NCBI GenBank assembly: GCA_030704615.1
Contig: CM060732.1
Coordinates: 18,290,001-18,354,000, forward strand
Source: Takakia lepidozioides
Lineage: Eukaryota; Plantae; Bryophyta
Length of the DNA stretch: 64,000 nt
Direction: 5' to 3'
The notes below the pieces were generated by a model, which saw only the letters and a program-made list of their open reading frames with translations, was not told the DNA's origin and ran no database searches. Positions 53 through 46,000 of this stretch are shown one piece after another. A program made the position numbers and the translations under genes. Position 1 is the stretch's first letter. Each line of letters begins with the position of its first letter.

Positions 53-3000
53 GTGACAGGAGAGAAGATTTCACGTTCTGTGAAGCTACCTACAGAGCGC
101 ATTGACTGGATTCGCATGGGTTGGACATCTCTCCTGTACCTGCACAAGGCACCACGCTCAGCATATTTTCAAGCAATTCAAGCAATTTTTGCAAAGGAAG
201 ATCATTTATCTTGTATTAAATGTCCACATAGAAGATGCACATGAATATAAGTTGATTGTGTGTTCTGTACAATCATACTCTGAATTTTGGTCAACTTTGT
301 TTCACTAAACAGCTTTCTGACAACAGGTACAACAGTGGCAACCAATGCCTTGCTGGAAAGGAAGGGAGAGCGTACAGCTCTTTGTGTAACTAAGGTGTCT
401 CTCTCTCTGAAACTGAAGAACACTTCTTCTTCCATTGCCCTCTATACTATGAATCCGTGGGAGATTCCACTGTCTATTCCGTGGAACCCAATCTCTCACT
501 GAAGTCTTTCACTATGAAGATCGGAAATGCTTGGCAGCTTACCTGCACGAGGCACTCACCCTTAGACAATCACTCGAACAATAGTTCTTATCTCTGGCTC
601 TGGTTTTCTGTTTCCCCTCTCATGTTTTCTTTCCATTTTGTCCCATAAGCTCTATGAGCTTTCCGCCAAGCTCGTCCTAAGATATTTGACCTCACTGTTT
701 CAAAGCCACCATCCCTGTACGTATGCTGAAGAGACGCCTCCACTTTTTCTGCTCCTCCATTATTCCAAATCTCGTTGGGTTTGATGAGGATAATGTTGAA
801 AGAAGGGCATCTCTGCCTGCATTTGCATGAGATAGCAAGGGGAGGGGTTTAACTTTTGTGGAGGAAGGAGGTGCACATAAAGATGTATATAAATAGGACA
901 TGCCTATTGTGGGGTTGGTGAACTGCATATGTGTTGGACTATTGGGCAAGGAAATGCATCAAGAGGCAAATAGACTCTTGGTTTCACTCAATATTGGAGG
1001 TCTTGAATAAGACGGCAGGGTGCAGGTATGAGGAAGTAATAGAGGCAGATGAGCGGGTCCAGCTGGCTCTCAATGGAGTACAGAGTCCAGGTGTAGGAGG
1101 GCTTCACACAGTGAAAGGGGTGTCGGGTGAGATGGTGGAGATTGTGAAACCTCTGGATGAAGAGAGCCTCAGGCCTTTGTTGCAGGTAGGGAAGACTGTA
1201 ATGTGTCCCGCTTTTCACTTGATGTTAGTGCAGGAAGGGCTACTATAAATCAGGCCAGTGGGCCATGGTCACTGACAAACCACAAAAGACCACAACATAT
1301 CTACTGTCAAAGCTTCTGAAACAAAACAATGGCAGTTTGTCATCTATGCATGTCACTTTGTTTACTGAGGTAGATCATGACAACGTATTACGGTCATGTA
1401 AAGCAATTTGGGTGTAGTGTTGCGACCATATTTAGGTGTGCACATGTCATTGGATATATTTTCCTATTATATAGAATGCAGGTCCTGGGAACCATCAGTC
1501 CTAGAGACACCATAATCCTAAGTTGAGATTACTTGCCAAGCCTAGTTAGAAGACCAGAGTTATCTCTGATCTTTTCTTAAACATTTTCCAAGTTGTGGCT
1601 GTCATTGAATAGTATCAGCTTGACAGCAATTATACCCTGCTTGGAGCATCCTATGTCTAAGATATTGTCCTGTGCAAGTAGTCTGGGACTTCCTGGATCT
1701 GCAAGTTTGATAAAGTTGAAGCTTGTTTTATTGGGGTGTGTAATTCAGGTTACACATGGCCAGTTTTAGCAGCCATAGCTTGTGATCTAAATGGTCTTTG
1801 TTGGACATGAAGGGACTTCTGGAGAAAGGGATTCGAAGCCTAGCAGTGGTCTTCTTGCATTCTTATACTTACCCTGTTCATGAACAGGTGATTTCCCATC
1901 CTTTTACCTCCTTAGGCATTGTGGGTACAAAATATTGCGGATGTCTGGTTATGTGATACTTTTTTGAATGTAAGAACCGGATGTCTGGTTATGTGATATT
2001 TTTTTGAATGTAAGAACCTAGGCTCTTGTTCAGGAGATTATCCTGATGAGAGAATGTACTCATAAGACACAGTCTTCGGGGCCATACACCCTGCGCCCAG
2101 TTTGAGTGGGACAAGAGGGAACAGACACTACGTTTGTGAGGGGCTTGCGCCAGTAGTGGTACTTACCATGATATATTATTTGTGTGGGCTTTCCAGATTT
2201 CCTCTAGGAAGCCCTTCACACAAGCATCAATCTGCTGTGTGTGATCCGCCCAGAAGTAAGACCCCCCACCAGGGCCAAGGCTTTAGGCTCAGTCTCAAGA
2301 ACTTTGAAAGTTGGCTACAGATGTGCAGGGACTATGTTGTTGATGGTCCTGAGTGGGTCGCGCTCTCTGATGAGAATATCACCGGACATTGTATTAGAAA
2401 ATAGTCTTCAGGCCACCTGCAGATCAGGCATTGACACTACACTAAAATTTAAACGGGGAGTCTACCTTTGAATAATAAACAGATGCAGAGAAGAAAGGGT
2501 GCTGAGGGTAGGTTGGCCCTTCAGGTCATCCTTAATGGCCTCACCCATATCACAGACGGGAAACAATTTCAGGGAAATTTTATGCCTAACTCAACCCGAA
2601 CAGCCACATTAGCTGTTCTACAGCATGCTGACATGCTCTCTTTTACCACCGAAAGCTGAATGGATTCTAAAGTCTACGGATGGTTGGAGTTACCTTGAGA
2701 TTGTACTCATAAGACGTTGTTTGCCGTAGCCTTGTGGCGGAGTTACCTTGAGAGAGAGAGAGAGAGAGAGAGAAGAGCAGGGGGGGAGGATAGAGCATGG
2801 AGTCTTCACTGTGGTGTCTGTTGCCTGAAAATACGGACATGGTATTTGCAGGCAGTGGAGCGTCTAGCAAAAACTCTAGGGTTCAAGCAAGTGTCCACAT
2901 CATCCGCACTGATGCCCATGGTGCGTGCAGTTCCAAGGGGTCAGACAGCAACTGTTGATGCCTATCTTACCCCTGTCATACGTGCATACCTTTCCGGCTT

Positions 3001-6000: not shown

Positions 6001-9000
6001 ACGTATGACTGTTGTGATAGCCAAGGAGATGAGTGTGGAGGAGATTGCACTTGGGTTCTTGGATGTTGCTAATGAGGCCATGTGTCGACCCATTCGCCAG
6101 GTATTCCTTACCTCTTTCTGACAGGCAGCTTTGGATTTAGCATCACAGCGCCAGCAGTGGCTTTGAATGGACCCATTGTCATTGCAACATGTCCACGTCC
6201 TGGACTGGGTGATTCCCTGAGTAGCTTGAGAACTTCTTGTATCTGCGAGAGCTTATGAACGAAACCTTGTCGTACCATTGTTCTTCATGCATCTTGTGTT
6301 GTATCATGTTCATGTAAGAGTTATTTTCCTGTCCTTGGAGTTTATCTCCACCCGGATAATGGATCTGTAGGCATCCTAAAATGGGGAACTGTTATTGCAG
6401 CTGACAGAGATGAAGGGGTACGAGACAAGCAAGCACACTCTGGCCTGCTTTGGAGGCGCGGGACCACAACATGCTTGTGCCATTGCAAGGGCCCTTGGCA
6501 TGCGTGAGTGTCTGTGTCTGTATAGGGTTGTTGGCCACAAGGCTACGGCAAACAACATCTTATGAGTACATTCTGTATAGGGTTGTTGTCCTTTCTTACA
6601 ATGTGCTCAGAACCCTCAGGTTCTTAGAGCTGCGATAGCACTCATCATGATATATGATTGTATCATCGTATTTCATACTCATCCAACAAACCCTGAAATT
6701 TATTGCACATCATTCTCAGCACATAGCCAGGCATACTGGTGATCCCCATGAGATTTTAATGGAGTAAGTGGGGACTTGTATTGCAGGGGAGGTAGTGGTG
6801 CACAGGTACTGTGGGATATTGAGCGCCTATGGGATGGGGCTCGCGGATGTGGTGGAGGAGGCTCAGGAACCATATGCAGCAGCCTATGGACCAGAGGCAA
6901 TGTCTGAAGTGATGAAACGTGCTGCTGATTTGACAGAGCATGTCACAAAACAACTGAGACTTCAGGTACTTGTCATGCTTAGAGAAAACTTGTTCCATTC
7001 AAGGGAGCTTATACGATGAACCTTTTTGAATTAAGTGACCAATTATGCTGCAGACATGCAAATGATATTCGTCATTAATTGAGCTCAGCCTATCGTGGGA
7101 GTCTGTGCTCCTCTTCCCTCTGTAGCATCCATAGCTCTTTCCTTCTCAATTTTATATTGTGCCATGTGCTAGCTCCTGTGAATCAGTAGACATCTTTCTC
7201 CTTTCTCCTTCACACAATGCACATTGATTACTGGTGTTTTGGTTTTTGGCACCAGGGATTCAAAGAGGAGGATATCAGCACGGAGTTACTACTCAACCTT
7301 CGATATGAGGTATGGTGCTCACTTCTATTTCCCTGTAGTCTTCAAAGGAGAATTATTCATAATCCACCAACTGGGCACTTTCCTCCAACTTGTTTGTCCA
7401 CGTTGCTGAGGGATGAAATCATTTCATTATCACTTGAGGACAATGGGTGGTGACAAACTGTGCTGCATGAGATGCAGGGCACTGACACAGCGTTGATGAT
7501 TAGTGCTCCTGATGATGGCAGTAACGACTATGCTACTGCCTTTGTGAAGCAATTCCGTCGGGAGTAAGTTTTCTGCTCTACCCTTGTTTTTCCCCCTCTT
7601 TTATCTCTCTCCTCTCCCCATCGAAACCCTGGGGTCTATTCCACAACTCTATTGCAAGCAAAGCACTGAATATCCATGAGACCCTTCATCTCTGTGGAGT
7701 GATTAGTTAGTCCTAGTGCTTGGTATGGGTTATTGTTCCATCATCTGTGCATTAGCTGTTCATCTTGTTATAGAGTTGACCAAAAGTTTGCTCAACTCAG
7801 GAGCCAGCCTTAACGTGGGTATTGGCTTCCTCACAATTGCAAGCAGCCAAAGACACCCTTGACATCTGATGTACGTACGTGAAGCTTCAAGGTGGATGAA
7901 TGCTGGGGGACACTCTCTTGTAAACCAAGTTGATGTAATCTTCTTATAATGTTTCGTTCTTGACATGAGGCAACTGTCTGTAGGTATGGGTTTGAATTAC
8001 AAAAGAGGGCCATTCTAATAAGTGATGTCAGGGTCCGGGGCACTGGTGTCACCAACATTTTGAGGTACGATTAGTTTTCCCTGTTTAGAACTGCTGGATG
8101 CTTGTTCATGCTGGTTTCTCTGTGGTTGGCATAGTCCTGCTACATTGATTCATCTATTCATACTCAAAGAGGCTATAGGAAAGTCCCAACTGAACCACAG
8201 TGTTAAACCTGTGCTCCTGGTTCTCACTTGACAACAAGATGCCCAAACTGAATTTGGGATTGACAATCCATTTTCTGTTCTATACACCTTAAGCCTTAAA
8301 CCATTCACTATGTGCCTGGCACAGGCCGGTTGTGCTGTCCAAGGGAGTGGGGGAACCGCAAGCAGAGGGAAGGCGCCACAAAGTATACTTCGGCACTGGC
8401 TGGCATGATACTCCAGTACGCTTCTACCTCCAGCAGAGTACTCCTTGTCCTCTTAGTTCTTTCCTCATTGGACTTGGAAACTTTCATTTTTGGGTGCTAA
8501 AGTAGAAGCAATAAAATTAGCGGGGATGGAAGTAGAATGGAAACAAACTCCCCAAGATGCATTGTGTTTGGTTGCAGGTGTATATGTTGGAGAAGCTAGG
8601 CTATGGTCATACCCTTGCTGGGCCTGCGGTCATCATGAACGGCAATAGCACGGTATTGTCTCCTTCTGATTTGAAACAACTTTTTGCACTTTCAGTCACC
8701 ATCGCACTACCCGGCGCTAATGTGGGGGACATGTTTCCTTAAAAGTATCTGAGGAAGGTGGATAGATTGCAAAGTAGATTGCTACTGGGGTATGGATGTA
8801 TTTGGATTACCATCGAGGACACTTGAATGTCTTCCTCCACAGAAAGATTGTGTTAGATAATATTGTGTTGGCTTGTTTTTCAGATTGTAGTGGAACCTGA
8901 ATGCAAGGCAGCGGTGACTAAATTTGGGAATGTATGCATAGCCATTGGGACTGGTCAATCCCTGCTAGCCTCTCAAGCAGCAAAGGCCAACACAAAAGCA

Positions 9001-14010: not shown

Positions 14011-14852
14011 AACGGGTATTTTTTCCAATTCCATGGAATGGGTGACAGTTCGGTGCAAATGCAGAAGTCAGGCTAGTACAGAGGAGCTCGCATCACTCCC
14101 ATGTGATTGACCATAAGCTTTTACTTCTCACTGTTCCAGTGCCCCTGGTGGGCACGGAGGAGACATTGGCTTCCTTCCTCTAGGGAATGAGCCTCTGGCA
14201 TGAACAAGGACAGTTGCTAAATTTCAGTGTCAGTAAGATTGAAGCAGTTCATTTTCTTCTACATCATCGCAGCTCATGAACTTCTTTGATTCTTAGGTGT
14301 TGATTTTTTGATGAAGAAATGTTATATTCACAAACCTGTGGGCTCCCTACATAAACACAGTTGTTCTTACTAGTATGGTTGCTCAATTTGGTTTTCAGCA
14401 CAAATGAGGGAGAGGAGGGTGTCAGAGGTAGTAAGGGCTTTGACACACCAAGCCAATTTCTAGTGCTCCGCCATGATGGAAGTGAATTTCTCACTTCCAG
14501 GTTAAAAACCACCCACCTCCCTGTTATGAAGCTTCAGCACTAGGGTTTTGGAACACTAGGGTTTATTCTGAGAGGACTGATTTATCCTCAAATTTCAGCA
14601 TCACTTTGCCGAGTTTTAGCCCGAATACTTCATTTGTTTGTGTTATGAAACAATCATTCGATTTGCACCATCACGAGGCCCGTGGCATTAGAATGATTTA
14701 CAAGATTAAGATTACAGATGTTAAGTGAATTCTGAAAATTTGGAATACCTTGGTTTGCATTGACCACAAGTGTACAGTAAAGAATAATGCATGTCATTTC
14801 ACTTGAAAATCATTGTATCATTGTGGACATCGCTTTTCTTAAATGCTATAGA

Positions 14853-15121
14853 TTGTACTCATAAGACGTTGTTTGCCATAGCCTTGTGGCCATTGACCCC
14901 GCGCCCAGTTTGAGCGGGAACAAAAGGGACAGAACCTACCTCTGTCAGGGGCTGACGTTGGTAGTAAGACTTACCTTCATATAAAGAATTAATCCGGGTT
15001 TTCCAGATATCCTCTAGAAATCCCTTCACACAAGCATCAATCTGCTGTGTGTGATTTGCCCAAAAACTAGGCCTCAGGAGGGCCTGGGCTTTTGGCTCAG
15101 CCTCGAGACTTTCAAAGTTGG
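14853..15121 (-). mobile_element. 269-bp 5'-truncated LINE-A copy in the 3' region of the kinase gene
   Basis: Near-identical to 34199-34465; 15-bp TSD cttaaatgctataga (14838-14852 / 15122-15136). Confidence 0.93.
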
Positions 15122-15301
15122 CTTAAATGCTATAGAGAAGAATTTTGTGGTGAAATTCTCTCTAGGTTTGACGGGGCACAAGCATCATCCTTCTCAGTTG
15201 CTGAGAGGGCTCAACCACCCTGCATAGCTTGGATATCTTGAAATAGATACAGCAACTACGTTGACCCCTTATGATGGCATAAGAGCGTCTTGACTTCAAT
15301 C

Positions 15302-19373: not shown

Positions 19374-19881
19374 AACGCCTCCCCCTCTCCAACCCAATAC
19401 AATTCTCCCTTTACAAACTAAGCCCGAAACCTCCAGATCTTGCCAAACTCGTCAATGCCGCTGGCATTGGGAAGAATTAGCTCATCAGGCGACCCGGATC
19501 AGCGCCTCTCAGCTCCCCCACTGCTCCTTCCCTCCTCATACCCCCTACTGAGAACACAGCCCACATGTCCAGCCCAAGACATGTCGCAGAATTGGTCGCT
19601 GGGAGAGTGTGGGTGCCTGCCTGCAGCATTGATGCACAGCCCACGACGCTGACCCACAACCCACAACGCAATTCCGCTGTCGATGCGAAGATTCGACGGT
19701 GGATTGGGCGGGTTGAGCCCAGAGCCGTCGATGCAGACATCGTACGGCGAGTCGCGTAGGCTGTGGGCGCGCCAAGTGTTGCAAAGCCACAACAAGGGAG
19801 CACTGGAATGCGTGCAGGGGATGGAAAAATAACTTTATGCGAGAGATTTGGTTTGAGGATCGCACATAAAGGCGCCCACAG
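19374..19881. promoter_or_regulatory. Compact divergent (bidirectional) promoter/5' UTR region between the kinase and the cyclophilin
   Basis: The two start codons are 508 bp apart, head-to-head; the region is CpG-rich compared with the introns. Confidence 0.6.
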
Positions 19882-25000: not shown

Positions 25001-25468
25001 GAAACAGCCCACTTTCACATTCTAAAATATCCATTTCACATCCACATTAAGACTGTCTACTTCTGCTCTTTACATGAATTGACAGCAAAGTACAGAGCTG
25101 CAAATAAGTAGGATGACGAGCAAAGGAGGTACAAACTGACGGTACAGACAAGACAAAATTCCACTGCGAACTACCAAACTGTTCCAGGTAGTAAATCAAT
25201 TCTTTGAGGTCTAGGTTCCTACATAAGACCAGTTTCGGAGGGAATGCCCCACAGCTGAGAAACAAAAATCGTATAGTATAATGATTCCTGTCCATGAAAT
25301 CCTGGGCGAAGGGATGCTTAATAGGAGGAAGATTGGCTGGTCCAAACCCATAGGTCATAACAGTGTCAGTATGGAGGGCCCCCGGGTAACAATTGAACCC
25401 CTGGTCCATTATACAGGCGCAACTTTACAGAGCGAAGTAAGTTTGAAGTGTCGCAAACACAAAACCTA

Positions 25469-30973: not shown

Positions 30974-31009
<36 letters not shown>

Positions 31010-34000
31010 TTACCCATAGAACCTAAGGCAATCCCTATGTAGAGAATGCCCACAAGCAGCCACCCTACTTGCTGCCGCATGATTTGAGAAGCTCAACTCC
31101 AGGAATTTCCCAAATGAAAGGCCCCATGCAGCATCTGACATGACTATCCTTCTTGTTGCAGGAGGGACCCCATTAACTCGTGCGCATCGTAGACAGCGAT
31201 GCCACATCCAGATCTTTCCCTCCCTCTCCCCCGGCAATACGACCTCGTTCAGGCGCTGCACAGTGATGGTGAGGCTACCCTGTCGATGTGTGTAGCAGTG
31301 CACATGCGAGTCCAAAGGCTCCTTACATCTTCCACAATGGTTGCTCTGGAAATTTGACAACCAACAAAAACCACCCATGACATTGTACACGCATACTCTC
31401 ACACTGAGTGTCTCGCTCTTCTCTCTCCCTCTCATTTTATCAAATACAGTATAGGTATAAGTCTCACAAGAAGAATGACGTCACTGGCAGGAACTAGCAC
31501 AACTGTTAGGCCTGTTCGACCCATAAACACAGTCCTCTGTGGAGGTGGGCCACTTCACTTTTCTCATAGAGGAGCCTTCAAATGTAAAAGGCCTAATATG
31601 ACTGAGTGGTGTCTGGTTGAGTATAATTTCCAACAAAGCCTTCACAAAAACAAACCCTGACAACAGATCCATTGGCTGCCATTGCAATGCATTTACAAGG
31701 GCATGAACAGCCAATAATCTGGCTCCTTGAAAGACAGATCAAACATAAGTAATTCCCTACATCTGAACTTTAAAAAGGGAAGACCTCAATATACTTTGCT
31801 GCCAGAGGCTAAGAACTGTAAACCTTCTGTCCTGCTGCCCAGCTATAGACACTAGGGAAGAGAAAGAAGGAGCAAGTAACTCACAACGTGGAACAGAGAA
31901 TCCCGCAAAAACTTTCCCAGGGGCTTGTCAGAGTTGCCATAGTACTTGATGCGCTTGAGATGTGGCTTTTCACACACAGTCCCTTTTCGCAGGCAACGAC
32001 TGGACAATGAGACCAAGATACTTTGATGATCGGATGGTGAGGGCGGGAAATCATCTTTAAGTACAGGATACTCTAACTCCAAGCTGTCAGCAGTATCTGC
32101 TGGGAGAACCCCACCTTCCAAAAGAGGCACTGGACTATCCAGCTGAATTGACTCTTCGGGATCATGTGTAACTGGTCTGTGGGTTTCCTCCTTGCTGATG
32201 CCTGCAGTAACTCCCTGGTCAGATCCCACCCTATAAGGTGACAAAAATCCAGGCTGAGCAATTGGTGTGTTACCACCCACTGCTGCGGCGCCAAACTTCC
32301 CACTGAAGGTTCTAGGTGTGGCAATCATGGGAAGTCCACTCCCCCGCCTCCCTATGATTTCAGATGTTGTCTTTGACCCTATCTCCAGAGAAGTATCTTT
32401 CAGAGATGCAGACAACCCTGATACAATCGGATTTAATCCCCCAACCTGCAAAACAGGGAAGATAGCAAATTAACTATTAGCAGACTAACGAACCAAAATG
32501 TTTGTCTGAGCTTCTCCCTGCACTTCTGCAACTTTGTAAGTCATGATAATAGTAATGTCCAAACACCACATACAAGATAATCCAAACGTATTCAAGCAGG
32601 CCTGAAATGCACTCATAAGACTTTGTTTGCCGTAGCCTAATGCAAGCAGGCCTGAGAAAGAGAATGTACTCATACGTTGTTTGCTGTAGACTTGTGGCCA
32701 TTGACCACGCGCTCAGTTTGAGCCAAAGGGACACAAACTACCTTTGCCAGGGACTGACACCGGTAATATGATTTACCTGGGAACAGACAATTGATCCGAG
32801 TTTTCCAGATATCCTCTAGAAATCCCTTTACACAAGCATCAATCTGCTGTGTGTGGTCTGCCCAATAACTAGGCCCCAAAGGGCCTGGGCTTTTGGTTCA
32901 GCCTTGAGACTTTCCAAGTTGGTAAACAGAGGTACAGGCACAAGACGTCTCTCTGGTGAGAGTACCGAGGACAATGAATCAGGAAGTGAATATTGTCTTC
33001 AGGTTGCCCACACAACAGGCATTTGCAATCCAGAAAGAGAGTGAGAGAGAGAGGAAGAGAGCACAGATACCACTGATGGGCTGTTGCTGTCACGTCTGCT
33101 CACTGCCTGAGCCAAGGATGTGGCACCTGATGGCCACCCTGCTTTCAAACCAAAGGAAGTCATGTGTACAGGGCCAGAACCGGGAGAATTTGCTGCTGAT
33201 GAGACAGAGGACGTTGAGACTGAGGTAGGAATTGTTTCAGGAGCAGCACCAGATGCACCGTCTTCATTATTACTCCTCCAGTTGGAGGAACCATTGCGGT
33301 TGATACCTTTTAATTGTTGGGTTGAAACAGGTGCATTGATTCCCCTGGCTTGCTGCTGCGCTTGAGGATTGACAACCTGCCCATTCATCCATCAACCGCC
33401 AATAAAGAGGATGATTCTTTTGCAAGATCGAAAGACAGCAAAAGCTGTTAATACAAAGCTATATACAAATAATACTTAACATACAACAAATAATAGAGAG
33501 CAATATCTCAGTTCAGACAGTCATGGAAGACCTGTCACACGCTCATTCCTTACAATTACTATCACTTGCATTCACCAATTTCAGATATCAATGAGTAGTT
33601 AGTACCTCATTTAATAGTTAGTACGTCATTTGGATCCTTGAATGCGCGGGAGAAACTACTACCATTGGTCCTAATTTAAGTGAATTCCCCATCACCTGTC
33701 CGGAACAGACTGGCAATAGACAGAACAAGGAAATAACCAAAGAGTTGCTAGAGTATAACCCTTACCTGTGATTGCCCAGAAGATGTTGGAATGGTGAACC
33801 CAGGTATGGACGAGATAGACCTCTCCAGGCTTGACTGTTTGGTTGGAACAATTACACTAATAGGTGAGCGGAAAGGAAGGTCTGGGAGAGAGGCACCCTC
33901 GTCAGCGAGGAAGGATGTCTCCAGTGCCAAGTGATATGCAGCAAACACAGCAAACTGGATAACCTTCTTCACCTTCTTCAATTCGTCACCATTGGCGCCC

Positions 34001-37000
34001 CTTAGCAAGACCTGCAACGTAGTGGAATCCTATCACTGTTATAGGTGTCATGGGAGATGCAAGGGACGCATACAACAAGAGAAAGCAAACTGGGGTATCC
34101 CAACCTCAGAAATTACTGAGATAGAGGGAGAGAGGGAGAGAGAGAATGTAATCACAAGACCTTGGTTGCCGTAGCCTAGGGGGAGAGAGAGAGAGAGATT
34201 GTACTCATAAGACGTTGTTTGCCGTAGCCTTGTGGCAATTGACCCCGCGCCCAGTTTGAGCGGGAACAAAAGGGACAGAACCAACCTCTGTCAGGGGCTG
34301 ACGTTGGTAGTAAGACTTACCTCCATATAAAATTAATCCGGGTTTTCCAGATATCCTCTAGAAATCCCTTCACACAAGCATCAATCTGCTGTGTGTGATT
34401 TGCCCAAAAACTAGGCCTCAGGAGGGCCTGGGCTTTTGGCTCAGCCTCGAGACTTTCAAAGTTGGTAAACAGGGGTACAGGCACAATTCCCTTAATAGAT
34501 TTGAAGAGAGCGTCTCTTTAATGAGAGAACCCCGGACAGTGCATCAGAAAATGAATACTGTCTTCAGATTGCCCACACAACGGGCAATCGCACTCTCCCT
34601 TTCCTCTCTGCTTCTGTTTGCTGTTCAAAGGTAGGCTTCCTGCCCTGAGTTTAAATTTCAGTCTAGTGCGGAGAGTGGGTAGACCCTTGAGGTCATCCAA
34701 GATGTCCTCCCCTATGTCACAGACTGGAAACAGGTTCAGGGAAGTTTTCTGCCTAACTTCATTTTCATCAGACAATCTCATGGCAACAGACATGGCTTTG
34801 GACACTACAGCCTCTAAGTCAGATTTATCCAGCAGGGTCAAGACTTGCGGATCCAGGTCCAGGTCCTTGAGAATCTCTTCTACTCTCTTCTGCCAGGACT
34901 TAGCCTGTTTGACAGGGCGGTCCTGTTTCCAAGATACAGAGTCGATTAACTTAGGATATCTGGTGTTGGGCATATGTTGCAGCTGACCCCACCATCTGAC
35001 CTTGAATTCATCTCGTCGGGAGCTTAAGGACGGAATGCCAAACTCACCCCGAACAGCCACATTGGCTGTTTTGGAGCATGCTGACATAAACTCCTTAAGC
35101 ACCCCCACTTGAATGGATTCTAGAGACTTAGCCTGGTTGGAGTTATCAACCCGTATTGCAGATCCGTACTCCAAGGCAGGTCTAATAACGCGACAAAGCA
35201 TGGTTTTCTTAACCTCAGAGTTGACCCCTCTGCAGTGGAAAAATTTAGTGAGCCCCAGAGCTTTGCCCTTGCCAGTTTGAACAACTTTCCGGATATGTGC
35301 ATCCCAATTACAACTGGAGGAGAACTCAACGCCCAGGTAAGTGTAGGAAGGGAGGACCGGGATCTCTTGGCTACCCCACTGCCACTTAAGATCACTTCCT
35401 CCCTCTCCTCTGTCGTTGAATGCTACCACTGCACATTTGCTGACATTAGCCTCTAGCCCCCAAAGATCAAAGTATCTCTTCGCGCAATCAATCAACTCCT
35501 GGAGATTGGTTGGAGTCTCCCCTATGCCTGCGAAGTCATCCGCAAACATAAGGGCTGGTATGGTGGTATCACCCACCCTTAACCCAAATCCCTCACTTTC
35601 CACATCCTCGAGGAGTTGATTGATGAAAACATTGAAGAGCAGAGGGGAGAGAGTACATCCTTGAGCTACACCTTGGTCTATGTCAAAGAAGTTGGACTTC
35701 TGTCCGTTAACAGTGACACAGCTTTTGGTGTGAGCATACAAGTTGTGGACAACTCTCCACATCTTTCCCTTGATCCCACAAGACCATAGGCGGAACCATA
35801 GGCCATCTCTCCACACAGTGTCATAAGCCTTTTTGACATCCAGGAAAAAAACATAAGTGGGTTTCCCTTCTTTTTTCCTTCCCTGGATAATCTGGCTTAG
35901 AGTGAAGATATGATCCACACAGCCCCTGTTTCGCCGAAAGCCAGCTTGGCCTTCGTGGAAACAACCTCTAGACTCCAGATCAACCTCGAGACGAGTACTT
36001 AAAATAATAGTTTTTTATTTGACCTTGCCGTTTTTGGACATTCCAGATCATGTAATGCGGCGAAGATATGTCGTCAGTAACAAGTCCGCTCATGGTTTTT
36101 TAGATCCGCTCATGGAAATAAGTGACCGTGCAACGGGAAAGCGTGATGCCACGGTAGTTCCCCGGTTCTTCTCTGTCACCCTTCTTGTATAGATTGACAA
36201 TGACCCCCTGTCGCCAGCGAAAGGGGATCATTTCAGTCTTCCAGATAAGGTTAAAGAGGAGAACTAGGGCCTTTATCATGGGATCGCCACCGTGCTTGAT
36301 AAGCTCGTTGACAATACCATCAGGTCCACCAGCTTTATATCCATTTAAATGTTCAATTGCTTCCACAATCTCAGAAGAACTAATGGGAGCGTTATAAGCC
36401 ATTGAAATATACTCCAGTTCATCAGGGCTGTTTTGAATCATAGGAACAGTTTTTCCAACTGTGTCCCTTCATTCAGCAGAAGACCCCTCACTGTTAGACC
36501 TAGAAGTTCTGCCAAGGATACTGTAGTGAGTTTCAAAGGTTTTGACAATGTCAATCGATGAAGTCACCACTGCACCTTTAGTAGTCTTCAGCGCTTGTAC
36601 TTGCTGACCGTTTTTCGGCTTGTACAAACGTTGAAGGGCCAACCAGAATTTCTTGTCATTACCACCATGGTGGTTTGAGTTTATTTCACTGTATAACTTG
36701 TCCCAGTATAATTTCTTCTGAGACCTAACAAGCTGATTGATATCTTTACGGAGCTGGTAGTACCTCGCCCACAATTCTCTGTTGGTTTCCAAATTGCAGC
36801 ACTCTTTATACAGGGCTCGTCTCTCAGCTATCTTGAGTTTAATCTCATTAGTCCACCAATTAACTGCTCTACCGCAGACAATTAGTTTCCTCCCAATGAT
36901 CTTGTCAGCCACGGAGGAAACGAAACTCTCCCAAGAGTCCACTGCTCTTTCGACTTCATTTCTTGCGTTAACAGAGCGTGACTGAAGTTCTTGGAGCGAT

Positions 37001-40000
37001 TGGACAAAATGAGGGAGAGCCTCTTGCAAGGCCTGGACGTACTCAGCCTTGACCTCCTCATTGTGGAATTTTTCTATGCGCCACTTCCGAATCGAACGTT
37101 TCACAATCTCTTCGTGGTGGGAAAACACCTTTTGATCTCAGTCCAAACCAGGAAGTGGTCAGAGGTACCAATATCAGTTCTGTCGATCAACACATTGGCA
37201 CACTGGGGGAACAAAATTTTGTCCATTATGATATAGTCCACAATGGAACGTTCCCCAGTTTGGGGTTTCTCACGAGTCCACTGCACTTGGTCACCTCTTG
37301 TCCTGTTATTCAAGGTCAAAAGCTGAAGCTCTTCTAGACAGTTAATTAACCGTCTGCCATTAGAATTCAGCTCGTCCTCACCAAAAGGTCCAATGATATC
37401 GTCCTGATGGATCCCTTTGCCCACCCGGGCATTGAAGTCCCCCAATAGTACCACCTGACCTTTGGCAAGGAACGAAGCACAGTCCAGCTTTACATCTTCG
37501 AAGGCCTTGTCTGCGTCAGCACTAAGGGTCCCCTCTGTGGGCATGTAAACACAACCAACAAAGAGGTCCTTTGTACTCATGCCGCACTTCAAGTTCAGTT
37601 TTAGCCAGATACTATGCTCGTACCTCAAACCCTTGTTGATAATTTCACAATTGTCAAACAAGAAATCACGGACAAAGAATCCGACCCCTTTTTGACCGCG
37701 TTTGGCAGAGGCTGCCTTGAGAGTACACATCTTACCTGCCCATTTATAACCAATGACATCTCCAACCAGTTTATCCGATGTTTCCCATGTTTCTTGCCCA
37801 GCACAGATATGAATATCATTAGTCCGAAGAACTTGTCCCACTTCAAGTTGTTTCCTTTGGTTGGTCAACCCTGAGAAGTTGAAAGTGGCCAGCCGCAAGC
37901 CAGCCCTTTGCGTGTGAATTGTTTGTCGTCTAGGTAGCTTGTGATTGCTCCTGGACGGCCAACCGTTCTGCAAAGGGGGGACAGTTACCCCGTGTGTAGA
38001 TTTTGCTCGTCTTGTGTAAACTTTGAGAATTGGTAAACCATTCAGGGTACCAAATCTTTCAGTTACACGACGCACAGGCTCCGCACACATAGGGGCAGAT
38101 TGTCCGTCAGACTGCTTGGGGACAATTACCCTGTGTATAGATTTTGCTCGTCTTGTGTAGACTTTGAGGATTGGTAAACCATTTAGAGTACCAAATCCTT
38201 CAGTTACACGACGTTCAGGCTCTGCACACTTAGGGACAGATTGTCCATCTGACGGCTTGGGGACAATTACCCCGTGTATAGAATTTGTTCGTCTTGTGTA
38301 AACCTTGAGGATTGGTAAACCATTCAGAGTACCAAATCCTTCAGATTCAGGATGTTCAGGTTCCGTACACTTAGGGGCATCTTGTCCTTCTGGCTGTTTG
38401 GATTCAACCTCATCCAGAGCATCAAACCGATTAGAAACTCTCAAGTTGAAGTTGTTGCCCTTGGTTGTCTTAGAGCGCCCCATTGAATCACCAATGTCTA
38501 AGACCGCTCTCCAGCCAGTCAAGGGACGAACTTCTTTGAGATTGAATTGATGCGGGACTCTATTAGAAGCACTTTTGGTCATTGCAACCTTCAACGTACC
38601 CCTGTTATCAAGTCTCGAGATGGTACCATTAGCCATGAAATCCAAGCCTAAGCTAGAGCATGTAGTTTTAAAGGACACATCGTCCATCCTGGGATTCACC
38701 CCAAAAACTACACATGAAACCCTAGATTTGGCATAAGTAACCAATTCCCAGGGATCACCCTGAGGAGTGTTGATGTTGATAGGAGCTATATTTTTGATTG
38801 TTTTCGCAGGCCATAAGTTTAAGCACAGGAACCAACCCGAGCCCAAGTGCCGAGTATGCTAGACAGAGCATACGACTGCCCAATTTGGGCGGAGGGGCTG
38901 CCCCCAAGCGGTAGGAGTCTGCTTGTTACCATTCAGAGATCAGACTCCAGGGAGTTGCAGGGAATGGCCCGTGTAGGCATATTCTAAAGAGGGAAAGGCC
39001 CCAAGCTTTCCAACTAAATCCAATGCACTACCTTACCTGAAGCAAAGCGCTTCAGGTCGAAACAAACAAGGACACGAGGTCACAAGGCCGGCATTTAGTC
39101 ACAGAGACATTAATGTACTCCCGTTTCAAGTCCACCCAATGTCAATAGGCTTCCTAGAGGACAGGGAGAAAAGAGAGAGAGAGAGAAAGACTCTTTGCAG
39201 AGATAGATTGTACTTGAGGGAGGGTGCCTTACATACGAAGGAATCAAGGCAACAACACCTTAATTCACCTTCAGCACTGTGTATCTATGAGACTTGAGAG
39301 CAATAGAGTGAAGGTCTGTCAACTTATGGAATGAAGATCACAGACTCTATTTAGAGTGGGATACACCTAGACAATAACTCTTGAAAGATTGGGAAAAACA
39401 GACATCACTAACCGTGCATCCCAAGGGCCTGGGACAGCCTTCAAAGAACATGAGGTTTTTAGTATTTTGTTTGCCTGCCTGGCCTGCACTGCCATGCTCC
39501 TCCACAAATTTTTCGATGTGAAAGAGCTCACAATGCCCCGCTTTCGGCACTACAAGGTTATCAGGAGAAGGAACCACCTGCCACCATTACCAAGGACTTT
39601 ATGTCAGAAAGTATATTGTACCATTTCTATCTCAAGCAGTATGCACATAACCTCAAGAGTGGACTCAAATACTACAAGACAGTTCAGAACTACAGAAGCC
39701 CCTCCTAGATAGAAGACGTGGTATAGTGGGCTGGAGTAAGACTGACCTGGGCACCCGTACAGCGTGCAATTCGCTCCAGAAGAGGCCTCTTAACATTCAG
39801 AACTAGTGATATTTCCTTGGCCAACAAACGTTCCTGGGCAAAACCTGATACAGTCTTCTCAACCAGAAGAACATTGGGATGGTGAGCTTCGATTCGGGCA
39901 ACTGTCATGCTGAGGTGGTCTCTCTCCTGCAACAGCACGTTACAGATATGATCAGGACTTCCACTCCATCTACCAGAAAAAATAATAAACAATGTTGAGA

Positions 40001-43000
40001 AACAACTAGCTAAGGATGAGGGAATTGAGAGGCCTAACCAAACACAGTACTTAAGAGCTCCTACAACCAACCGATTACTCGTTCATTTTGATCCAATTGC
40101 AAAACCAGTGACCCAAGATAGATTATAGCAAACCAAAGTGTCTCCATGCAACAGCCACTAGACATGGATAGCAGAGAAACCATGAGGCCAGAGAAAATCT
40201 AATCCAGATCCATGTCTAACTTCATTTTCATCAGACAATCTCATGGCAACAGACATGGCTTTGGACACTACAGCCTCTAAGTCAGATTTATCCAGCAGGG
40301 TCAAGACTTGCGGATCCAGGTCCAGGTCCTTGAGAATCTCTTCTACTCTCTTCTGCCAGGACTTAGCCTGTTTGACAGGGCGGTCCTGTTTCCAAGATAC
40401 AGAGTCGATTAACTTAGGATATCTGGTGTTGGGCATATGTTGCAGCTGACCCCACCATCTGACCTTGAATTCATCTCGTCGGGAGCTTAAGGACGGAATG
40501 CCAAACTCACCCCGAACAGCCACATTGGCTGTTTTGGAGCATGCTGACATACACTCCTTAAGCACCCCCACTTGAATGGATTCTAGAGACTTACCCTGGT
40601 TGGAGTTATCAACCCATATTGCAGATCCGTACTCCAAGGCAGGTCTAATAACGCGACAAAGCATGGTTTTCTTAACCTCAGAGTTGACCCCTCTGCAGTG
40701 GAAAAATTTAGTGAGCCCCAGAGCTTTGCCCTTGCCAGTTTGAACAACTTTCCGGATATGTGCATCCCAATTACAACTGGAGGAGAACTCAACGCCCAGG
40801 TAAGTGTAGGAAGGGAGGACCGGGATCTCTTGGCTACCCCACTGCCACTTAAGATCACTTCCTCCCTCTCCTCTGTCGTTGAATGCTACCACTGCACATT
40901 TGCTGACATTAGCCTCTAGCCCCCAAAGATCAAAGTATCTCTTCGCGCAATCAATCAACTCCTGGAGATTGGTTGGAGTCTCCCCTATGCCTGCGAAGTC
41001 ATCCGCAAACATAAGGGCTGGTATGGTGGTATCACCCACCCTTAACCCAAATCCCTCACTTTCCACATCCTCGAGGAGTTGATTGATGAAAACATTGAAG
41101 AGCAGAGGGGAGAGAGTACATCCTTGAGCTACACCTTGGTCTATGTCAAAGAAGTTGGACTTCTGTCCGTTAACAGTGACACAGCTTTTGGTGTGAGCAT
41201 ACAAGTTGTGGACAACTCTCCACATCTTTCCCTTGATCCCACAAGACCATAGGCGGAACCATAGGCCATCTCTCCACACAGTGTCATAAGCCTTTTTGAC
41301 ATCCAGGAAAAAAACATAAGTGGGTTTCCCTTCTTTTTTCCTTCCCTGGATAATCTGGCTTAGAGTGAAGATATGATCCACACAGCCCCTGTTTCGCCGA
41401 AAGCCAGCTTGGCCTTCGTGGAAACAACCTCTAGACTCCAGATCAACCTCGAGACGAGTACTTATAACTCTGCAGAATGTCTTGCCAACAGCATTGAGGA
41501 GCGTGATGCCACGGTAGTTCCCCGGTTCTTCTCTGTCACCCTTCTTGTATAGATTGACAATGACCCCTGTCGCCAGCGAAAGGGGATCATTTCAGTCTTC
41601 CAGATAAGGTTAAAGAGGAGAACTAGGGCCTTTATCATGGGATCGCCACCGTGCTTGATAAGCTCGTTGACAATACCATCAGGTCCACCAGCTTTATATC
41701 CATTTAAATGTTCAATTGCTTCCACAATCTCAGAAGAACTAATGGGAGCGTTATAAGCCATTGAAATATACTCCAGTTCATCAGGGCTGTTTTGAATCAT
41801 AGGAACAGTTTTTCCAACTGTGTCCCTCCATTCAGCAGAAGACCCCTCACTGTTAGACCTAGAAGTTCTGCCAAGGATACTGTAGTGAGTTTCAAAGGTT
41901 TTGACAATGTCAACCGATGAAGTCACCACTGCACCTTTAGTAGTCTTCAGCGCTTACTTGCTGACCGTTTTTCGGCTTGTACAAACGTTGAAGGGCCAAC
42001 CAGAATTTCTTGTCATTACCACCATGGTGGTTTGAGTTTATTTCACTGTATAACTTGTCCCAGTATAACTTGTCCCAGCAAGGCCTGGACGTACTCAGCC
42101 TTGACCTCCTCATTATGGAATTTTTCTATGCGCCACTTCCGAATCGAACGTTTCACAGATCTCTTGGTGTTGGGAAAACACCTTTTGATCTCAATCCAAA
42201 CCAGGAAGTGAGAGAGTGAGAGCAGAACGGGTACAGATTACGTAGAGACTACCATACCTGCTGCAGTAAAGTGTCAAGGGAGGAGAGTTGATTGGAAACT
42301 CGCTGGTACTCCAATGCCCCGCCCAGAAGCAGAAGTCGAGGATTCTTGAAACGAGTAGTCATACGTCTATGGGCCACATTCTTTCGACACACGACTCCCT
42401 TCACAACCACGCTGTCCATGCCCAAATGATACACCACAAAAAAAACCCCACATCTTACCAAAATGTAACAACCAATGATGCTCTCTCTCTCTCTCTCTGT
42501 CTCTCTCTCTGTCTCTCTCTCTTTAATCTTGTCAGATGGTGGGGTCAGCTGCAACATATGCCCAACACCAGATATCCTAAGTTAATCGACTCTGTATCTT
42601 GGAAACAGGACCGCCCTGTCAAACAGGCTAAGTCCTGGCAGAAGAGAGTAGAGAGATTCTCAAGGACCTGGACCTGGATCCGCAAGTCTTGACCCTGCTG
42701 GATAAATCTGACTTAGAGGCTGTAGTGTCCTCAGCCATGTCTGTTGCCATGAGATTGTCTGACGAAAATGAAGTTCGGCAGAAAACTTCCCTGAACTTGT
42801 TTCCAGTCAGTGACATGGGGGAGGACATCTTGGATGACCTCAAGGGTCTACCCACTCTTGGCACTAGACTGAAATTTAAACTCAGGGCAGGAAGCCTACC
42901 TTTGAACAGCAAACAGAAGCAGAGAGGAAAGGGAGAGTGCAATTGCCCGTTGTGTGGGCAATCTGAAGACAGTATTCATTTTCTGATACACTGTCCGGGG

Positions 43001-46000
43001 TTCTCTCACCAAAGAGACGCTCTCTTCAAATCTATTAAGGGAATTGTGCCTGTACCCCTGTTTACCAACTTTGAAAGTCTCGAGGCTGAGCCAAAAGCCC
43101 AGGCCCTCCTGAGGCCTAGTTTTTGGGCAAATCACACACTGCAGATTGATGCTTGTGTGAAGGGATTTCTAGAGGATATCTGGAAAACCCGGATTAATTT
43201 TATATGGAGGTAAGTCTTACTACCAACGTCAGCCCCTGACAGAGGTAGGTTCTGTCCCTTTTGTTCCCGCTCAAACTGGGCGCGGGGTCAATGGACACAA
43301 GGCTACGGCAAACAACGTCTTATGAGTACAATCTCTCTTTAATCTTGGGATATTTCAGGTGGAATAAAGTGAATTTTTCCTGTGGATGTCCTTGAACTGA
43401 CAAGTAGACACTTGCTGCAAAATTCACTCCCCGAATAGGGCCTTGTGGGATTTATTGAGTGCCCATGTGCTGGTTTACAATTAGGGTTTCAGAACCCTAA
43501 CCCTGAAATTTAGTACAAAAGTTGCTGGAGTACGGATAGCGGCTACCTGAAACTAGAGGCAAAGTGTCGGGCACACAGCTCACCAAGCTTTGCCTTCAAG
43601 AGATTTTCGACAGGGCTGCGGCCAACACGGTTTAAGCGCAACCTTGCCTTCATTGTGTTGGTCGAGCTTCCTATGCAGTTATAGGGAAGCCATGGCTCAT
43701 TTGTTGACATGAACAGGAAGTTACACCCAGCCCTTACCTGTGTTTTGCAATTACTTCTTGTTGCGTGAACGGATATGCGCAACGTCACAGACTGGTCTGC
43801 CTCAAACTTTCAAGATTCTGTGCCTTTATTATTACCCTTGCAATCTTTCACTTGCTGAGATCTGCATGTTGGACAGCGATAGCAGGCGTGAAGACCTGGT
43901 ACTCACCTCGTGCATCCTCACTAACATGCAATCTGTGGATGTGGTGGTTTCTGGGACGGGTGCAGGTGAGGGTCCCTCACCTTTCATGGGTCTCTAAGCT
44001 ACATGTGTAAGTCTTGCTACAAAGTACATTGGATAGATGATGGAAATCGCCTATCGCATGAGGCAGCCACTGCCTGGTACAACGCCTGACGACAGCCTCA
44101 TGTTTCTGTGAGGGAAGTATTTAAAGGAAGTAATCTACCCTTGGGATCTGATACCAGAGGGTTCTGAAGACCCGTCTTGACTTGGATCAATCTCAGTTTA
44201 CAGCCCAGCAGAGTGATTTCATTTTAAATACTGTGCTTGTTTCCTTTCAAGACATGACAGTACACCCCATTCGGGCTATGGTGGAAAGACTTCGATTTGT
44301 CTCAGTTTTGAGACATGTGATTTGTATTTGTCTTGACGCTATTTTGATGAAACCGAATTATCATACAGAAGTACATCAGACATTTACTGTGGGCAGAGAT
44401 CTCTATGGTTTTCAGCAAGCACTTGTTTGCTTAAGTAAAGGCTAAAGCTGACTTGGAGGTCACTGACCTACACTCCACATGCTAAAAAGCACAAAATTCG
44501 GTTTTCTGGCAATCCCAGTATGATGTCTGTCACTATGAAGAAAGGTGATTTTCTTAAGGGTTTCTAACAAACCCCAGGTCCCACCCCAATCACCCAAAAG
44601 TGTGAAACAACTCATGAGAAAGACTGTGGTTTAGGAGAAGGGTGATGGTGCCTTGCATGGAAGGCTGTTTTGTCCTTGTATTTTTTTTTTAAACTTTCTG
44701 ATCTGGTCAAGTCCTGACAGATCCTTCCTTGTCATGACGAGACAACCCCTACCTCTCTCTTGTTTGTCCCACAAGGCTACGGCAAACAACATCTTATGAG
44801 TACATTATTTTGTTTGTCCCACTACCAGAGTGAGCCCCTCACGAAGGTCGTCTCTGTTTTCTTTTGTTCCGCCCAAACTGGGCACGGGGTCTATGGACCA
44901 CGCCTTATGAGTACAATCTCACTTTTCTGTTTGTTCCATTAGCTCTTTGAGCTTCCGGTGGACTTGGAAGTATCTTTCTTTCTTCCAATAAAATTGTCTC
45001 TCCCCATACAACACTGGAGGACACACAAGGAAGGCCATCAAGGACCTCATATTCATGTAGTACGCTCAAACCAAACCAAACTGAACAACAACAGTCAAAT
45101 CCTACCTGTCCTTGCGCCTGCCTGAAGCTACACACTTCACCTTCACATAGCCTCCTGGGTCCATTCCCCCTCCTCTGTTGGTGTCAGGCTTAACCATATT
45201 TGCTGCTTGCAAAGCCAACGTACTAATAATCTCCAACCAGCTATCCATGTCACCTTCTTCCCCAACCTGCAATAAGTGTTGTCAGCAAAAAGCCTCACAT
45301 ACTGCAAGCAAGGATAAGCTTCTGGCCTTGACGTTTGCCTGGTCAACTGGGAGCCTGGATATGGCATTCAGGGTGAGTGGTGAGCTGCAGCCCTAATCAC
45401 AGCTACACAATCTTAAAACAGCCTACTAACATGCAAGACGAAAGAAGATACCTGCACGTCCTCCCCATTGAGCAGCTGGACGACGAGGGCCCGAAAGTGG
45501 CCATCAACCATAGCCCGCATGGCCTTGCGATGCTCCTCTGAAGCTGCCTTCTCCCTGCTTCGGTATTCGCTGCTGCTAACACTGCCTGGCGAGCGTGGCA
45601 ATCCCCACCCCCCTTCATCATCGTCATCATCATAATCGACCTGGCTCCAGCAAAATCAAAAGCATCAGTTTGCTGTTGGACTATGACACATATAATTTGG
45701 TGCCATGGCTTTCATCAATTTTCGTCCAAGTGCTGCAGGTTTCTAAGTTCTACACAATGAGTTCTTGCCTACTTTTTCATTTCCTCTATCAGCCTCGTGA
45801 CAGTTATGACCTCATAAAACCCAGTTGTCAGGCTCCACCAAAACAATCTAGCCAATCTTGTACCTACTGAAAATTCTATCAGCATCAAAGTTGTTGATAG
45901 GGGATATAGGTGAACACATATTTGATGCAGCAGTAATTGTAAGCTGTAGCAGTAGTCTTCATCAGCACTTGGCAAGAGCATCACAAACACAAGAATGAAC

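What the first reader, a model, noticed from the sequence alone, without database searches (positions are those of the whole stretch)
2686..44822. Discrete class of 33-38 bp 'micro-retroinsertions': the last ~38 nt of a LINE, each with its own flanking duplication
Seen: five insertions (2701-2738, 6534-6571, 32606-32642, 34145-34177, 44773-44809) consist only of the LINE-A terminus (GCCACA)AGGCTACGGCAAACAACRTCTTATGAGTACAW. Four have unambiguous 13-17 bp TSDs. Their 5' ends fall within about 6-8 nt of each other, at the small hairpin TGGCC-ACAA-GGCTA, while the other copies truncate at scattered points (84, 269, ~370, ~640 and 800 bp). Both the older (TACATT) and younger (TACAAT) end variants yield micro-copies, so they seem to be generated repeatedly. 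Established: TPRT makes 5'-truncated copies with TSDs, normally with a broad length spread. Inference: a fixed RT stop, a specific RNA cleavage site, or a separately mobilised ~40-nt parasite RNA much shorter than typical SINEs. Such copies would be missed by standard repeat masking.
Basis: partly seen in the sequence, partly recalled or inferred. Interest (0 to 1): 0.8.

Follow-up and report, generated by a model that had tools for sequence, protein, structure and literature searches.

The report
Tiny tail-only LINE insertions
Five separate insertions made of only the last 33-39 bases of a plant jumping gene (a LINE) all begin inside one small, deeply conserved RNA hairpin of its tail. Copying therefore seems to end repeatedly at that spot, a sharper form of a known behaviour, shown so far in one 64-kb window only.

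Summary
Five insertions carry only the LINE terminus, and four have clean 13-17 bp target-site duplications. Scans down to a 14-base terminal box find exactly 13 tails in the window and none of 14-32 nt. The cluster is therefore not a detection floor (p <= 0.003 under any non-increasing length distribution).

New here:
- The parent is a ~5 kb endonuclease plus reverse-transcriptase LINE, nearly full length at 34198-39171.
- Its last ~70 nt form a two-hairpin "handle" (P1, P2) that is conserved in LINEs only 40-55% identical in protein, from marine and other eukaryote contigs. P2 shows compensatory changes.
- The micro-copies begin at the 5' edge of P2 (three young copies at G39, within about two bases) or in its loop (two old copies at A33).
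- The 84-nt copy begins at the first paired base of P1 (position 69-70).

My reading: these are dead-on-arrival retrotransposition products whose ends are set by the handle. The template may be trimmed back to the hairpin edge, or the enzyme may be blocked there; sequence alone cannot separate the two. A separate 40-nt parasite RNA is unlikely.

The genome-wide test could not be run, because no public collection I could search held this genome. The scan had already noted a sibling case on other DNA of this genome (s1-470269, a fixed 69-nt tail class; also s1-460497).

The parts
2700..2738 (-). Micro-copy 1: last 38-39 nt of LINE-A, young variant (ends ACAAT), 5' end exactly at G39. TSD at 2686-2699 and 2739-2752.
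6534..6572 (+). Micro-copy 2: last 38-39 nt (variant ACATC with ACATT end), 5' end at G39, or up to 41 with 2 nt of TG microhomology. TSD at 6518-6533 and 6573-6588.
32606..32642 (-). Micro-copy 3 (older): 33 LINE nt from A33 plus 4 extra nt (CATT) at the 5' junction. TSD at 32593-32605 and 32643-32655. Lies 7-9 nt downstream of the old 368-nt copy.
34145..34178 (-). Micro-copy 4 (oldest, about 86% identical): 33-34 LINE nt from A33, inside a (CT)n tract, so the TSD is ambiguous. The full-length copy later landed just upstream of it.
44773..44809 (+). Micro-copy 5: 34 LINE nt plus 4 nt of CCAC microhomology (5' end 34-38), same variant as micro-copy 2, with one extra ATT unit at the tail. TSD at 44760-44772 and 44810-44822. 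Sits at the 5' junction of the subfamily-B copy.
28180..28264 (+). 84-nt insertion: 69-70 LINE nt starting at the first paired base of hairpin P1. It is preceded by 15 nt of filler, which is a second partial copy of the P1 loop plus the linker up to G39/G40, lacking the P1 3' arm. TSD 13-14 bp.
14852..15121 (-). 269-270 nt copy, TSD 14-15 bp.
32663..33031 (-). Old copy of about 368 nt, about 79-83% identical to the young copies.
34198..39171 (-). Near full-length LINE-A (about 4.97 kb) with frameshifted ORFs carrying an APE-type endonuclease, an RT and a C-terminal Cys/His motif. Flanked by (TC)n.
42532..43332 (+). 800-nt copy used as the reference. ORF2 ends at 43213 and the 3' UTR is 120 nt. 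P1 hairpin is at 43264-43287 (positions 69-46 from the end). P2 hairpin is at 43293-43304 (positions 40-29). The terminal box is the last 14 nt. TSD 15-16 bp.
40213..42210 (-). About 2 kb internal LINE-A fragment, 99.6% identical to the full-length copy, lacking the last ~552 nt and therefore the tail.
2053..2591 (-). Related subfamily D copy (540 nt or more); same P1 and terminal box, shorter spacer.
30722..30787 (-). Related subfamily C copy (about 66-90 nt, TSD decayed).
44816..44918 (+). Related subfamily B copy (about 100 nt); a 17-nt gap removes P2 in this single copy.

Best explanation
The five pieces are independent, dead-on-arrival target-primed reverse-transcription products of one LINE family.

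The LINE carries no poly(A). It ends in a conserved 'handle': hairpin P1 (positions 69-46 from the end), an invariant linker (GGTCAATGG-like), hairpin P2 (positions 40-29), a spacer and a terminal box (the last 14 nt). Its endonuclease nicks at T|CTC-like sites and cDNA synthesis starts at the RNA's 3' end.

The 5' ends of the shortest copies are set by the edges of this handle. Three young copies begin at G39 (within two bases), the 5' edge of P2. Two old copies begin at A33, in the P2 loop. The next size class begins at position 69-70, the 5' edge of P1.

The mechanism I favour is inferred, not shown. The template RNA, held by the LINE protein at its handle, is cut or trimmed back to a hairpin edge. 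cDNA synthesis then runs off there, and the short cDNA is joined to the upstream target end with 0-4 nt of microhomology or a few extra bases.

Shown here: the insertions, their TSDs, the shared target motif, the empty 14-32 nt range, the conserved hairpins and where the ends fall. Inferred: what ends the cDNA.
For: - The insertions and their TSDs are real.
- The target motif after the tail is the same as for the long copies.
- No copy of 14-32 nt exists although such copies would be detectable. p <= 0.0034 under a monotone null.
- P1 is predicted in all 8 long tails of four subfamilies, and in 5 of 6 distinct lineages when each tail (3 window subfamilies, 5 relative loci) is folded alone.
- P2 is 87% paired across 8 tails, against 25-40% when the partners are slid. 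Two of its pairs have changes on both sides.
- The tail motif recurs in LINEs of ENA and Tara contigs that are 38-55% identical in protein.
- The ends fall at the 5' edges of P2 (39-41) and P1 (69-70), not at the 3' feet (28 and 46) where a structure-induced RT pause would be expected.
- The filler of the 84-nt copy ends at G39/G40, the complement of the micro-copies' start. This is what a jump onto the 3' end of an RNA cut at that point would give.
- In R2 PRINT experiments, an unstable RNA template gives more 5'-truncated insertions, and 'extra template' fillers occur (PMC11331408).
Against: - There are only five copies, in one window picked by eye from thousands.
- The two old copies start at A33, not at a hairpin edge.
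- A 39-nt template lacks P1 and the invariant linker, which are the best candidates for the protein's binding site, so trimming would have to follow RNP assembly.
- No known ribozyme or other RNA family matches the 3' UTR.
- There is no RNA evidence at all.
- The 69-70 nt class has one member here; the rest rests on an unchecked note.
Confidence: 0.4

Rival explanations
1. RT roadblock. The template is intact, but the reverse transcriptase, having primed and copied 33-39 nt, cannot get past the handle that the LINE protein itself still holds (the invariant linker plus the P2 5' arm and P1). It aborts, and the stub is joined to the target. This resembles the template boundary element of telomerase.
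For: - The young copies stop at G39, the 3' border of the most conserved stretch of the tail (positions 48-40, invariant or nearly so across relatives).
- Stringent-type LINE proteins bind their 3' stem-loop through a region between the EN and RT domains (PMC4176376).
- The spread of ends (33-39) suits a collision better than a clean cut.
- The filler of the 84-nt copy skips the P1 3' arm, which shows the enzyme slipping at this hairpin.
Against: - Structure-induced pauses should lie at the 3' feet of the hairpins (positions 28 and 46), and none does.
- It gives no reason for an end at position 69-70, just after P1 has been fully copied.
- P2 alone is weak (-5.8 kcal/mol) and P1 moderate (-10.5 kcal/mol).
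Confidence: 0.3
2. Chance. These are ordinary 5' truncations from a broad or steep length distribution, and they happen to bunch in this window. The first reader noticed the bunch because thousands of windows were read.
For: - Steep power-law length distributions often put 5 or more of 13 copies into some 9-nt span (26-78% of simulations).
- Another LINE of this genome is said to leave tails of about 25-130 nt (s1-460497, unchecked).
- The look-elsewhere effect over thousands of windows is real.
Against: - Under such distributions the bunch should sit at the detection floor (14-22 nt), not at 33-39 with nothing below. The joint probability is <= 0.003.
- The bunch coincides with a conserved structural element.
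- Three young copies are compatible with the very same base.
Confidence: 0.2
3. Separate parasite. A roughly 39-nt RNA with its own source gene is mobilised in trans by the LINE enzyme, making it the smallest SINE-like unit.
For: - Micro-copies 2 and 5 are identical over 38 nt. They share two differences (ACATC, ACATT end) that are seen in none of the young long copies of the window.
- The 39 nt hold nearly all of conserved P2 and the terminal box.
Against: - 39 nt cannot carry an internal promoter, and there is no tRNA, 5S or 7SL head.
- It lacks P1 and the invariant linker.
- Micro-copy 1 carries the ordinary young-subfamily sequence, and the old ones carry old variants, so the class tracks the LINE's own subfamilies.
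- The shared A is at a CpG. 2 of 3 young micro-copies against 0 of 5 young long copies is not significant (Fisher p about 0.1, my arithmetic).
Confidence: 0.05

Closest known systems
Extreme 5' truncation of LINE insertions (L1, CR1, L2 and others; textbook TPRT, from my own knowledge)
   Same: The 3' end is intact, there is a TSD, the target is the same as for long copies, the copies are dead on arrival, and the 5' junctions have 0-4 nt of microhomology or a few extra bases.
   Different: The shortest copies here form a narrow class (33-39 nt) with an empty range below it, tied to a hairpin edge. Usually one sees a broad spread.
Stringent-type LINEs that are recognised through a 3' stem-loop (UnaL2, ZfL2-1/-2; Hayashi et al. 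2014, PMC4176376)
   Same: There is no poly(A). A conserved stem-loop lies close to the 3' end, with a short terminal box or repeat after it, and the tail is conserved over large distances.
   Different: Protein binding is untested here. The handle has two hairpins. The micro-copies lack the larger hairpin, so they cannot be the minimal mobilisable unit in the UnaL2 sense unless P2 plus the box suffices.
R2 protein-mediated transgene insertion (PRINT): 5'-truncated insertions and 'extra template' junctions (PMC11331408)
   Same: Truncation rises when the RNA template is unstable. Junctions form with little or no microhomology. Fillers are copied from a second template.
   Different: That is an engineered system in human cells with a site-specific element. 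No fixed truncation point at the 3' module is reported in the passages I read.
Fixed 69-nt LINE tail retrocopies noted earlier by this scan on other DNA of the same genome (s1-470269, unchecked AI note)
   Same: A discrete tail-only class with a common 5' end. The handle is shared with relatives as far away as brown algae. In my reference copy the first paired base of P1 is exactly position 69, and one copy here starts there.
   Different: That class keeps the whole handle. The class here is shorter and lacks P1, so 69 nt is not the smallest copy this kind of LINE can leave.
Telomerase template boundary element (from my own knowledge; analogy only)
   Same: A protein-held helix next to the template limits how far a related reverse transcriptase copies.
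   Different: No evidence here that the stop is enforced by a bound helix; in a LINE it would be a failure, not a function.

Membership tests
5'-truncated LINE (non-LTR) insertion made by TPRT | Sequence co-linear with the parent element's exact 3' terminus | tested here: met
   All five match the last 33-39 nt of the 800-nt and full-length copies.
5'-truncated LINE (non-LTR) insertion made by TPRT | Target-site duplication directly abutting both ends | tested here: met
   13-17 bp perfect TSDs in four copies; the fifth lies in (CT)n and is ambiguous.
5'-truncated LINE (non-LTR) insertion made by TPRT | Parent encodes an endonuclease and a reverse transcriptase | tested here: met
   PF03372/PF14529 and PF00078 hits on the ORFs of the 34198-39171 copy.
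5'-truncated LINE (non-LTR) insertion made by TPRT | Same target preference as the long copies | tested here: met
   In 11 of the 13 copies the tail is followed by CTC-, CTG- or CTA-type sequence; micro-copies 3 and 5 are followed by TCAGG and TTG instead. Three micro-copies are stacked beside other copies.
Stringent-type LINE with 3' stem-loop recognition | Conserved stem-loop near the 3' end, kept by compensatory change | tested here: met
   P2: 87% of cells paired, two pairs changed on both sides, slid controls 25-40%. P1: a hairpin with different stem sequences in 5 of 6 lineages.
Stringent-type LINE with 3' stem-loop recognition | Cognate ORF2 protein binds the stem-loop, which is needed for mobility | not testable with these tools
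   Needs binding and retrotransposition assays.
SINE or other non-autonomous retroposon with its own source gene | Own promoter or small-RNA-derived head | tested here: not met
   No Rfam family at gathering score in the window and no tRNA found. The insert is 33-39 nt of LINE tail only.
SINE or other non-autonomous retroposon with its own source gene | Diagnostic mutations private to the short class | tested here: inconclusive
   Two of five share ACATC plus the ACATT end. The others carry ordinary subfamily variants. Too few copies.
RNA end defined by a known self-cleaving ribozyme | Match to a described ribozyme family at the cut | tested here: not met
   Only chance-level hits (E 0.99 and 8.7) in 43000-43400.

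The most novel reading that the evidence does not exclude
The LINE RNA is cut at a fixed bond inside hairpin P2 (between G40 and G39), by the element's own ribonucleoprotein or by an undescribed RNA motif. The resulting 39-nt 3' piece is still a competent template. That would make it the smallest unit known to be retrotransposed, and a genomic footprint of the enzyme's initiation complex. The same rule would give the 69-nt class at P1.
Probability: 0.15. Interest if true: 0.7.

Novelty: new variant of a known kind. Interest (0 to 1): 0.45.

Why it matters
If the two size classes (about 39 and about 69 nt) hold genome-wide, the genome itself records at single-base resolution where cDNA synthesis by a stringent-type LINE ends within its own recognition handle. 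That would give a cheap read-out of the initiation-to-elongation step of target-primed reverse transcription. Today this step is studied mainly in R2 and L1.

It would also matter for annotation. Insertions of under 40 nt escape repeat masking, yet here they sit in the introns of a FAB1-like gene and beside other copies. The deep conservation of the handle, from a moss-type plant to marine eukaryotes, marks it as a functional RNA worth structural study.

Tried and rejected
Searches for more of this genome (all blank):
- The exact 21-nt tail pattern found nothing in viral contigs, metagenome contigs or genome contigs.
- The 173-aa ORF2 C-terminal fragment found no protein.
- The 466-aa RT ORF found only relatives of 24-70% identity, the best-covering ones 38-55%.
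- The genome-wide histogram therefore could not be made.

Replication in relatives:
Two returned no DNA.
- The Ectocarpus locus L003 did not translate to the query and showed no recognisable tail.
- The 22-kb loci L001, L006 and L007 hold one tail each and no micro-copy.

Other checks:
- Rfam found nothing meaningful.
- Self-comparison of the window found no other interspersed family to use as a control.
- Three literature searches with narrow terms returned nothing.

Readings rejected:
- Remnants of longer copies after deletion, because TSDs abut both ends.
- Segmental duplication of one micro-copy, because flanks and TSDs all differ.
- Endonuclease-independent capture at breaks, because TSDs and the usual target are present.
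- Twin priming for the 40213-42210 and 42532-43332 pair, because the + copy has its own TSD and the two overlap by about 250 nt of LINE sequence.

Full report
**What is there**

The window is plant DNA of a moss type, according to earlier notes of this scan. A FAB1/PIKfyve-like gene lies on the minus strand: FYVE domain at 47.5-48.2 kb, PIP5K domain at 26.5-27.2 kb. Its introns are full of one LINE family.

Reading the five claimed sites confirms each insertion. The 30-nt tail pattern occurs 8 times with up to 3 mismatches, against none in 100 shuffles. A script that looks for exact repeats flanking each tail gives these TSDs:

| Insert | Strand | TSD |
|---|---|---|
| 2700-2738 | - | 14-15 bp |
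| 6534-6572 | + | 16-17 bp |
| 32606-32642 | - | 13 bp |
| 44773-44809 | + | 13 bp |
| 34145-34178 | - | 11-12 bp, ambiguous, inside (CT)n |

I count positions from the last base of the element. On that count the LINE-derived parts begin as follows:

- G39 with no microhomology.
- G39, or up to 41 with 2 nt of TG microhomology.
- A33, preceded by four extra bases (CATT).
- A33/34.
- Somewhere in 34-38, because of 4 nt of CCAC microhomology.

**The parent element**

The copy at 34198 is not an 800-nt fragment. It runs to about 39171 (4.97 kb), flanked by (TC)n. It carries frameshifted ORFs with an Exo_endo_phos endonuclease, an RVT_1 reverse transcriptase and a C-terminal Cys/His motif.

Other copies:

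- 800 nt at 42532-43332.
- 269 nt at 14852-15121.
- 368 nt (old) at 32663-33031.
- 84 nt at 28180-28264.
- A tail-less 2-kb fragment at 40213-42210.
- Three copies of related subfamilies: 2053-2591, 30722-30787 and 44816-44918.

In 11 of the 13 tails the next bases are CTC-, CTG- or CTA-type sequence; the exceptions are micro-copies 3 and 5. The last T of the element overlaps the first T of most TSDs. Three micro-copies sit within about 60 nt of another copy's end. This fits the TCT-type targeting and stacking that this scan noted elsewhere in the genome (s1-480409, s1-460497).

**Is the cluster only a detection floor?**

No. I scanned both strands with the terminal 12, 14 and 18 nt at 1, 2 and 3 mismatches, and with two internal tail probes. 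Every hit but one belongs to the same 13 tails. The exception, at 51655, is a 3-mismatch match expected by chance. No copy of 14-32 nt exists in the window.

- Under any non-increasing density of lengths, the chance that all five copies of 41 nt or less fall in 33-41 rather than 14-32 is at most (9/28)^5 = 0.0034.
- Under a log-uniform density it is 2e-4.
- Steeper densities do bunch copies, but at the floor, not at 33.

Two cautions apply. The bins were chosen after seeing the data, and the window was picked from thousands.

**What the 39 nt are**

Alignment of the eight long tails of the window (A1) shows three features: an invariant hairpin P1 with loop AAC, a spacer of variable length, and an invariant 14-nt terminal box.

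The protein search found no copy from the same genome. It did find LINEs in Ectocarpus and in ENA, Tara and JGI contigs, those with the best coverage 38-55% identical. I fetched several of them and found that five loci from four distinct contigs end in the same motif: a hairpin, then an invariant GCG.GGTC, then a small hairpin P2, then a (C/T)ATGAGTA-like box followed by a short A/T repeat.

On alignment A2:

- It forms a standard pair in 87% of cells, against 25-40% when the partners are slid.
- Two of its pairs change on both sides (C-G to A-U, C-G to U-A).
- P1 has quite different stem sequences in the relatives, yet folds as a hairpin in 5 of 6 lineages.

In the reference copy P1 is 43264-43287 (positions 69-46) and P2 is 43293-43304 (positions 40-29). 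No Rfam family, ribozymes included, matches the 3' UTR.

**Where the ends fall**

- The three young micro-copies begin at the 5' edge of P2 (G39, within two bases).
- The two old ones begin at the 3'-most loop base (A33).
- The 84-nt insertion has 69-70 LINE nt and begins at the first paired base of P1.
- Its 15-nt filler is a second, partial copy of the P1 loop joined to the linker, ending at G39/G40 and lacking the P1 3' arm.
- None of the ends lies at the 3' foot of a hairpin (positions 28 or 46), where a structure-induced pause would be expected.

An earlier, unchecked note of this scan reports four 69-nt tail copies with one common start in another window (s1-470269). In my reference copy position 69 is exactly the first paired base of P1. 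That makes this note and my 84-nt copy look like one class.

**Mechanism**

The insertions are TPRT products; this much is shown. What ends the cDNA is inferred. I favour a template whose 5' end lies at a hairpin edge, because the RNA held in the ribonucleoprotein has been cut or trimmed back to it. My reasons:

- One rule then explains both size classes.
- The filler of the 84-nt copy looks like a jump onto the 3' end of the complementary piece.
- In R2 PRINT experiments, unstable templates give more 5'-truncated insertions, and second-template fillers occur (PMC11331408).

The close rival is a roadblock. The enzyme copies up to G39 and collides with the most conserved stretch of the tail (positions 48-40), presumably held by the LINE protein as in stringent-type LINEs (PMC4176376). 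This suits the spread of ends, but not the end at position 69-70.

I put about 0.65 on the general claim that the ends are non-random and set by the handle. That splits into about 0.4 for the trimmed template and about 0.3 for the roadblock, with some overlap in what they predict. Chance gets 0.2.

A separate parasite RNA gets 0.05. The piece has no promoter and no small-RNA head, and it lacks P1. The class follows the LINE's own old and young variants. The only hint in its favour is that micro-copies 2 and 5 are identical and share two changes not seen in the long young copies of the window. One of those changes is at a CpG.

**Limits**

I could reach no other part of this genome. The tail 21-mer is absent from the three collections, and no same-genome proteins are on record. 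The relatives' loci held one tail each.

**Verdict**

This is a new variant of known LINE truncation behaviour, of moderate interest, and the scan has already seen a sibling case on other DNA of this genome.

Noticed in passing
window 34198-39171 (-): Near full-length LINE-A of about 4.97 kb. The region upstream of the endonuclease holds three tandem repeats of about 30 aa (a [17 protein letters not shown]-like unit). The ORF is broken into four pieces by frameshifts.
   Followed up: partly
window 39108-39120 (-), inside the 5' UTR of the full-length copy: A 9-nt match to the element's own 3' end (GAGTACATT) about 50 nt from its 5' end. At 9 nt, chance is not excluded.
   Followed up: no
window 40213-42210 (-): A 2-kb LINE-A fragment, 99.6% identical to the full-length copy, that ends abruptly about 552 nt before the element's 3' end and has no tail. 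It is either a recent duplication or a 3' deletion. It lies between exons of the FAB1-like gene.
   Followed up: partly
window about 26500-48200 (-): A FAB1/PIKfyve-like gene: FYVE finger at 47539-48210, chaperonin-like exons near 39705-40070 and 42249-42557, PIP5K domain at 26558-27232. Its introns hold eight of the 13 LINE tails.
   Followed up: partly
window 28180-28194 (+): A 15-nt filler at the 5' junction of the 84-nt copy. It is made of the P1 loop region joined to the linker, with the P1 3' arm skipped. This looks like a template switch plus a hairpin bypass.
   Followed up: partly
window 44807-44809 (+); L001 near 12080, L006 near 12766, L004 near 3206: Micro-copy 5 carries one extra ATT after the normal end. 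The distant relatives end in (ATT)n, (TTA)n or (TTTA)n. The family probably has a rudimentary tail repeat that can slip at initiation.
   Followed up: no
L001, L002, L004, L005, L006/L007 (ENA and Tara contigs): LINEs only 38-55% identical in protein keep the same tail motif (invariant GCG.GGTC, then the P2 hairpin, then an ATGAGTA-like box). The RNA handle is therefore much older than this genome's family.
   Followed up: partly
window 63068-64000: A tandem or satellite-like repeat with self-matches up to depth 8. It was already noted by another reader (s1-461610).
   Followed up: no
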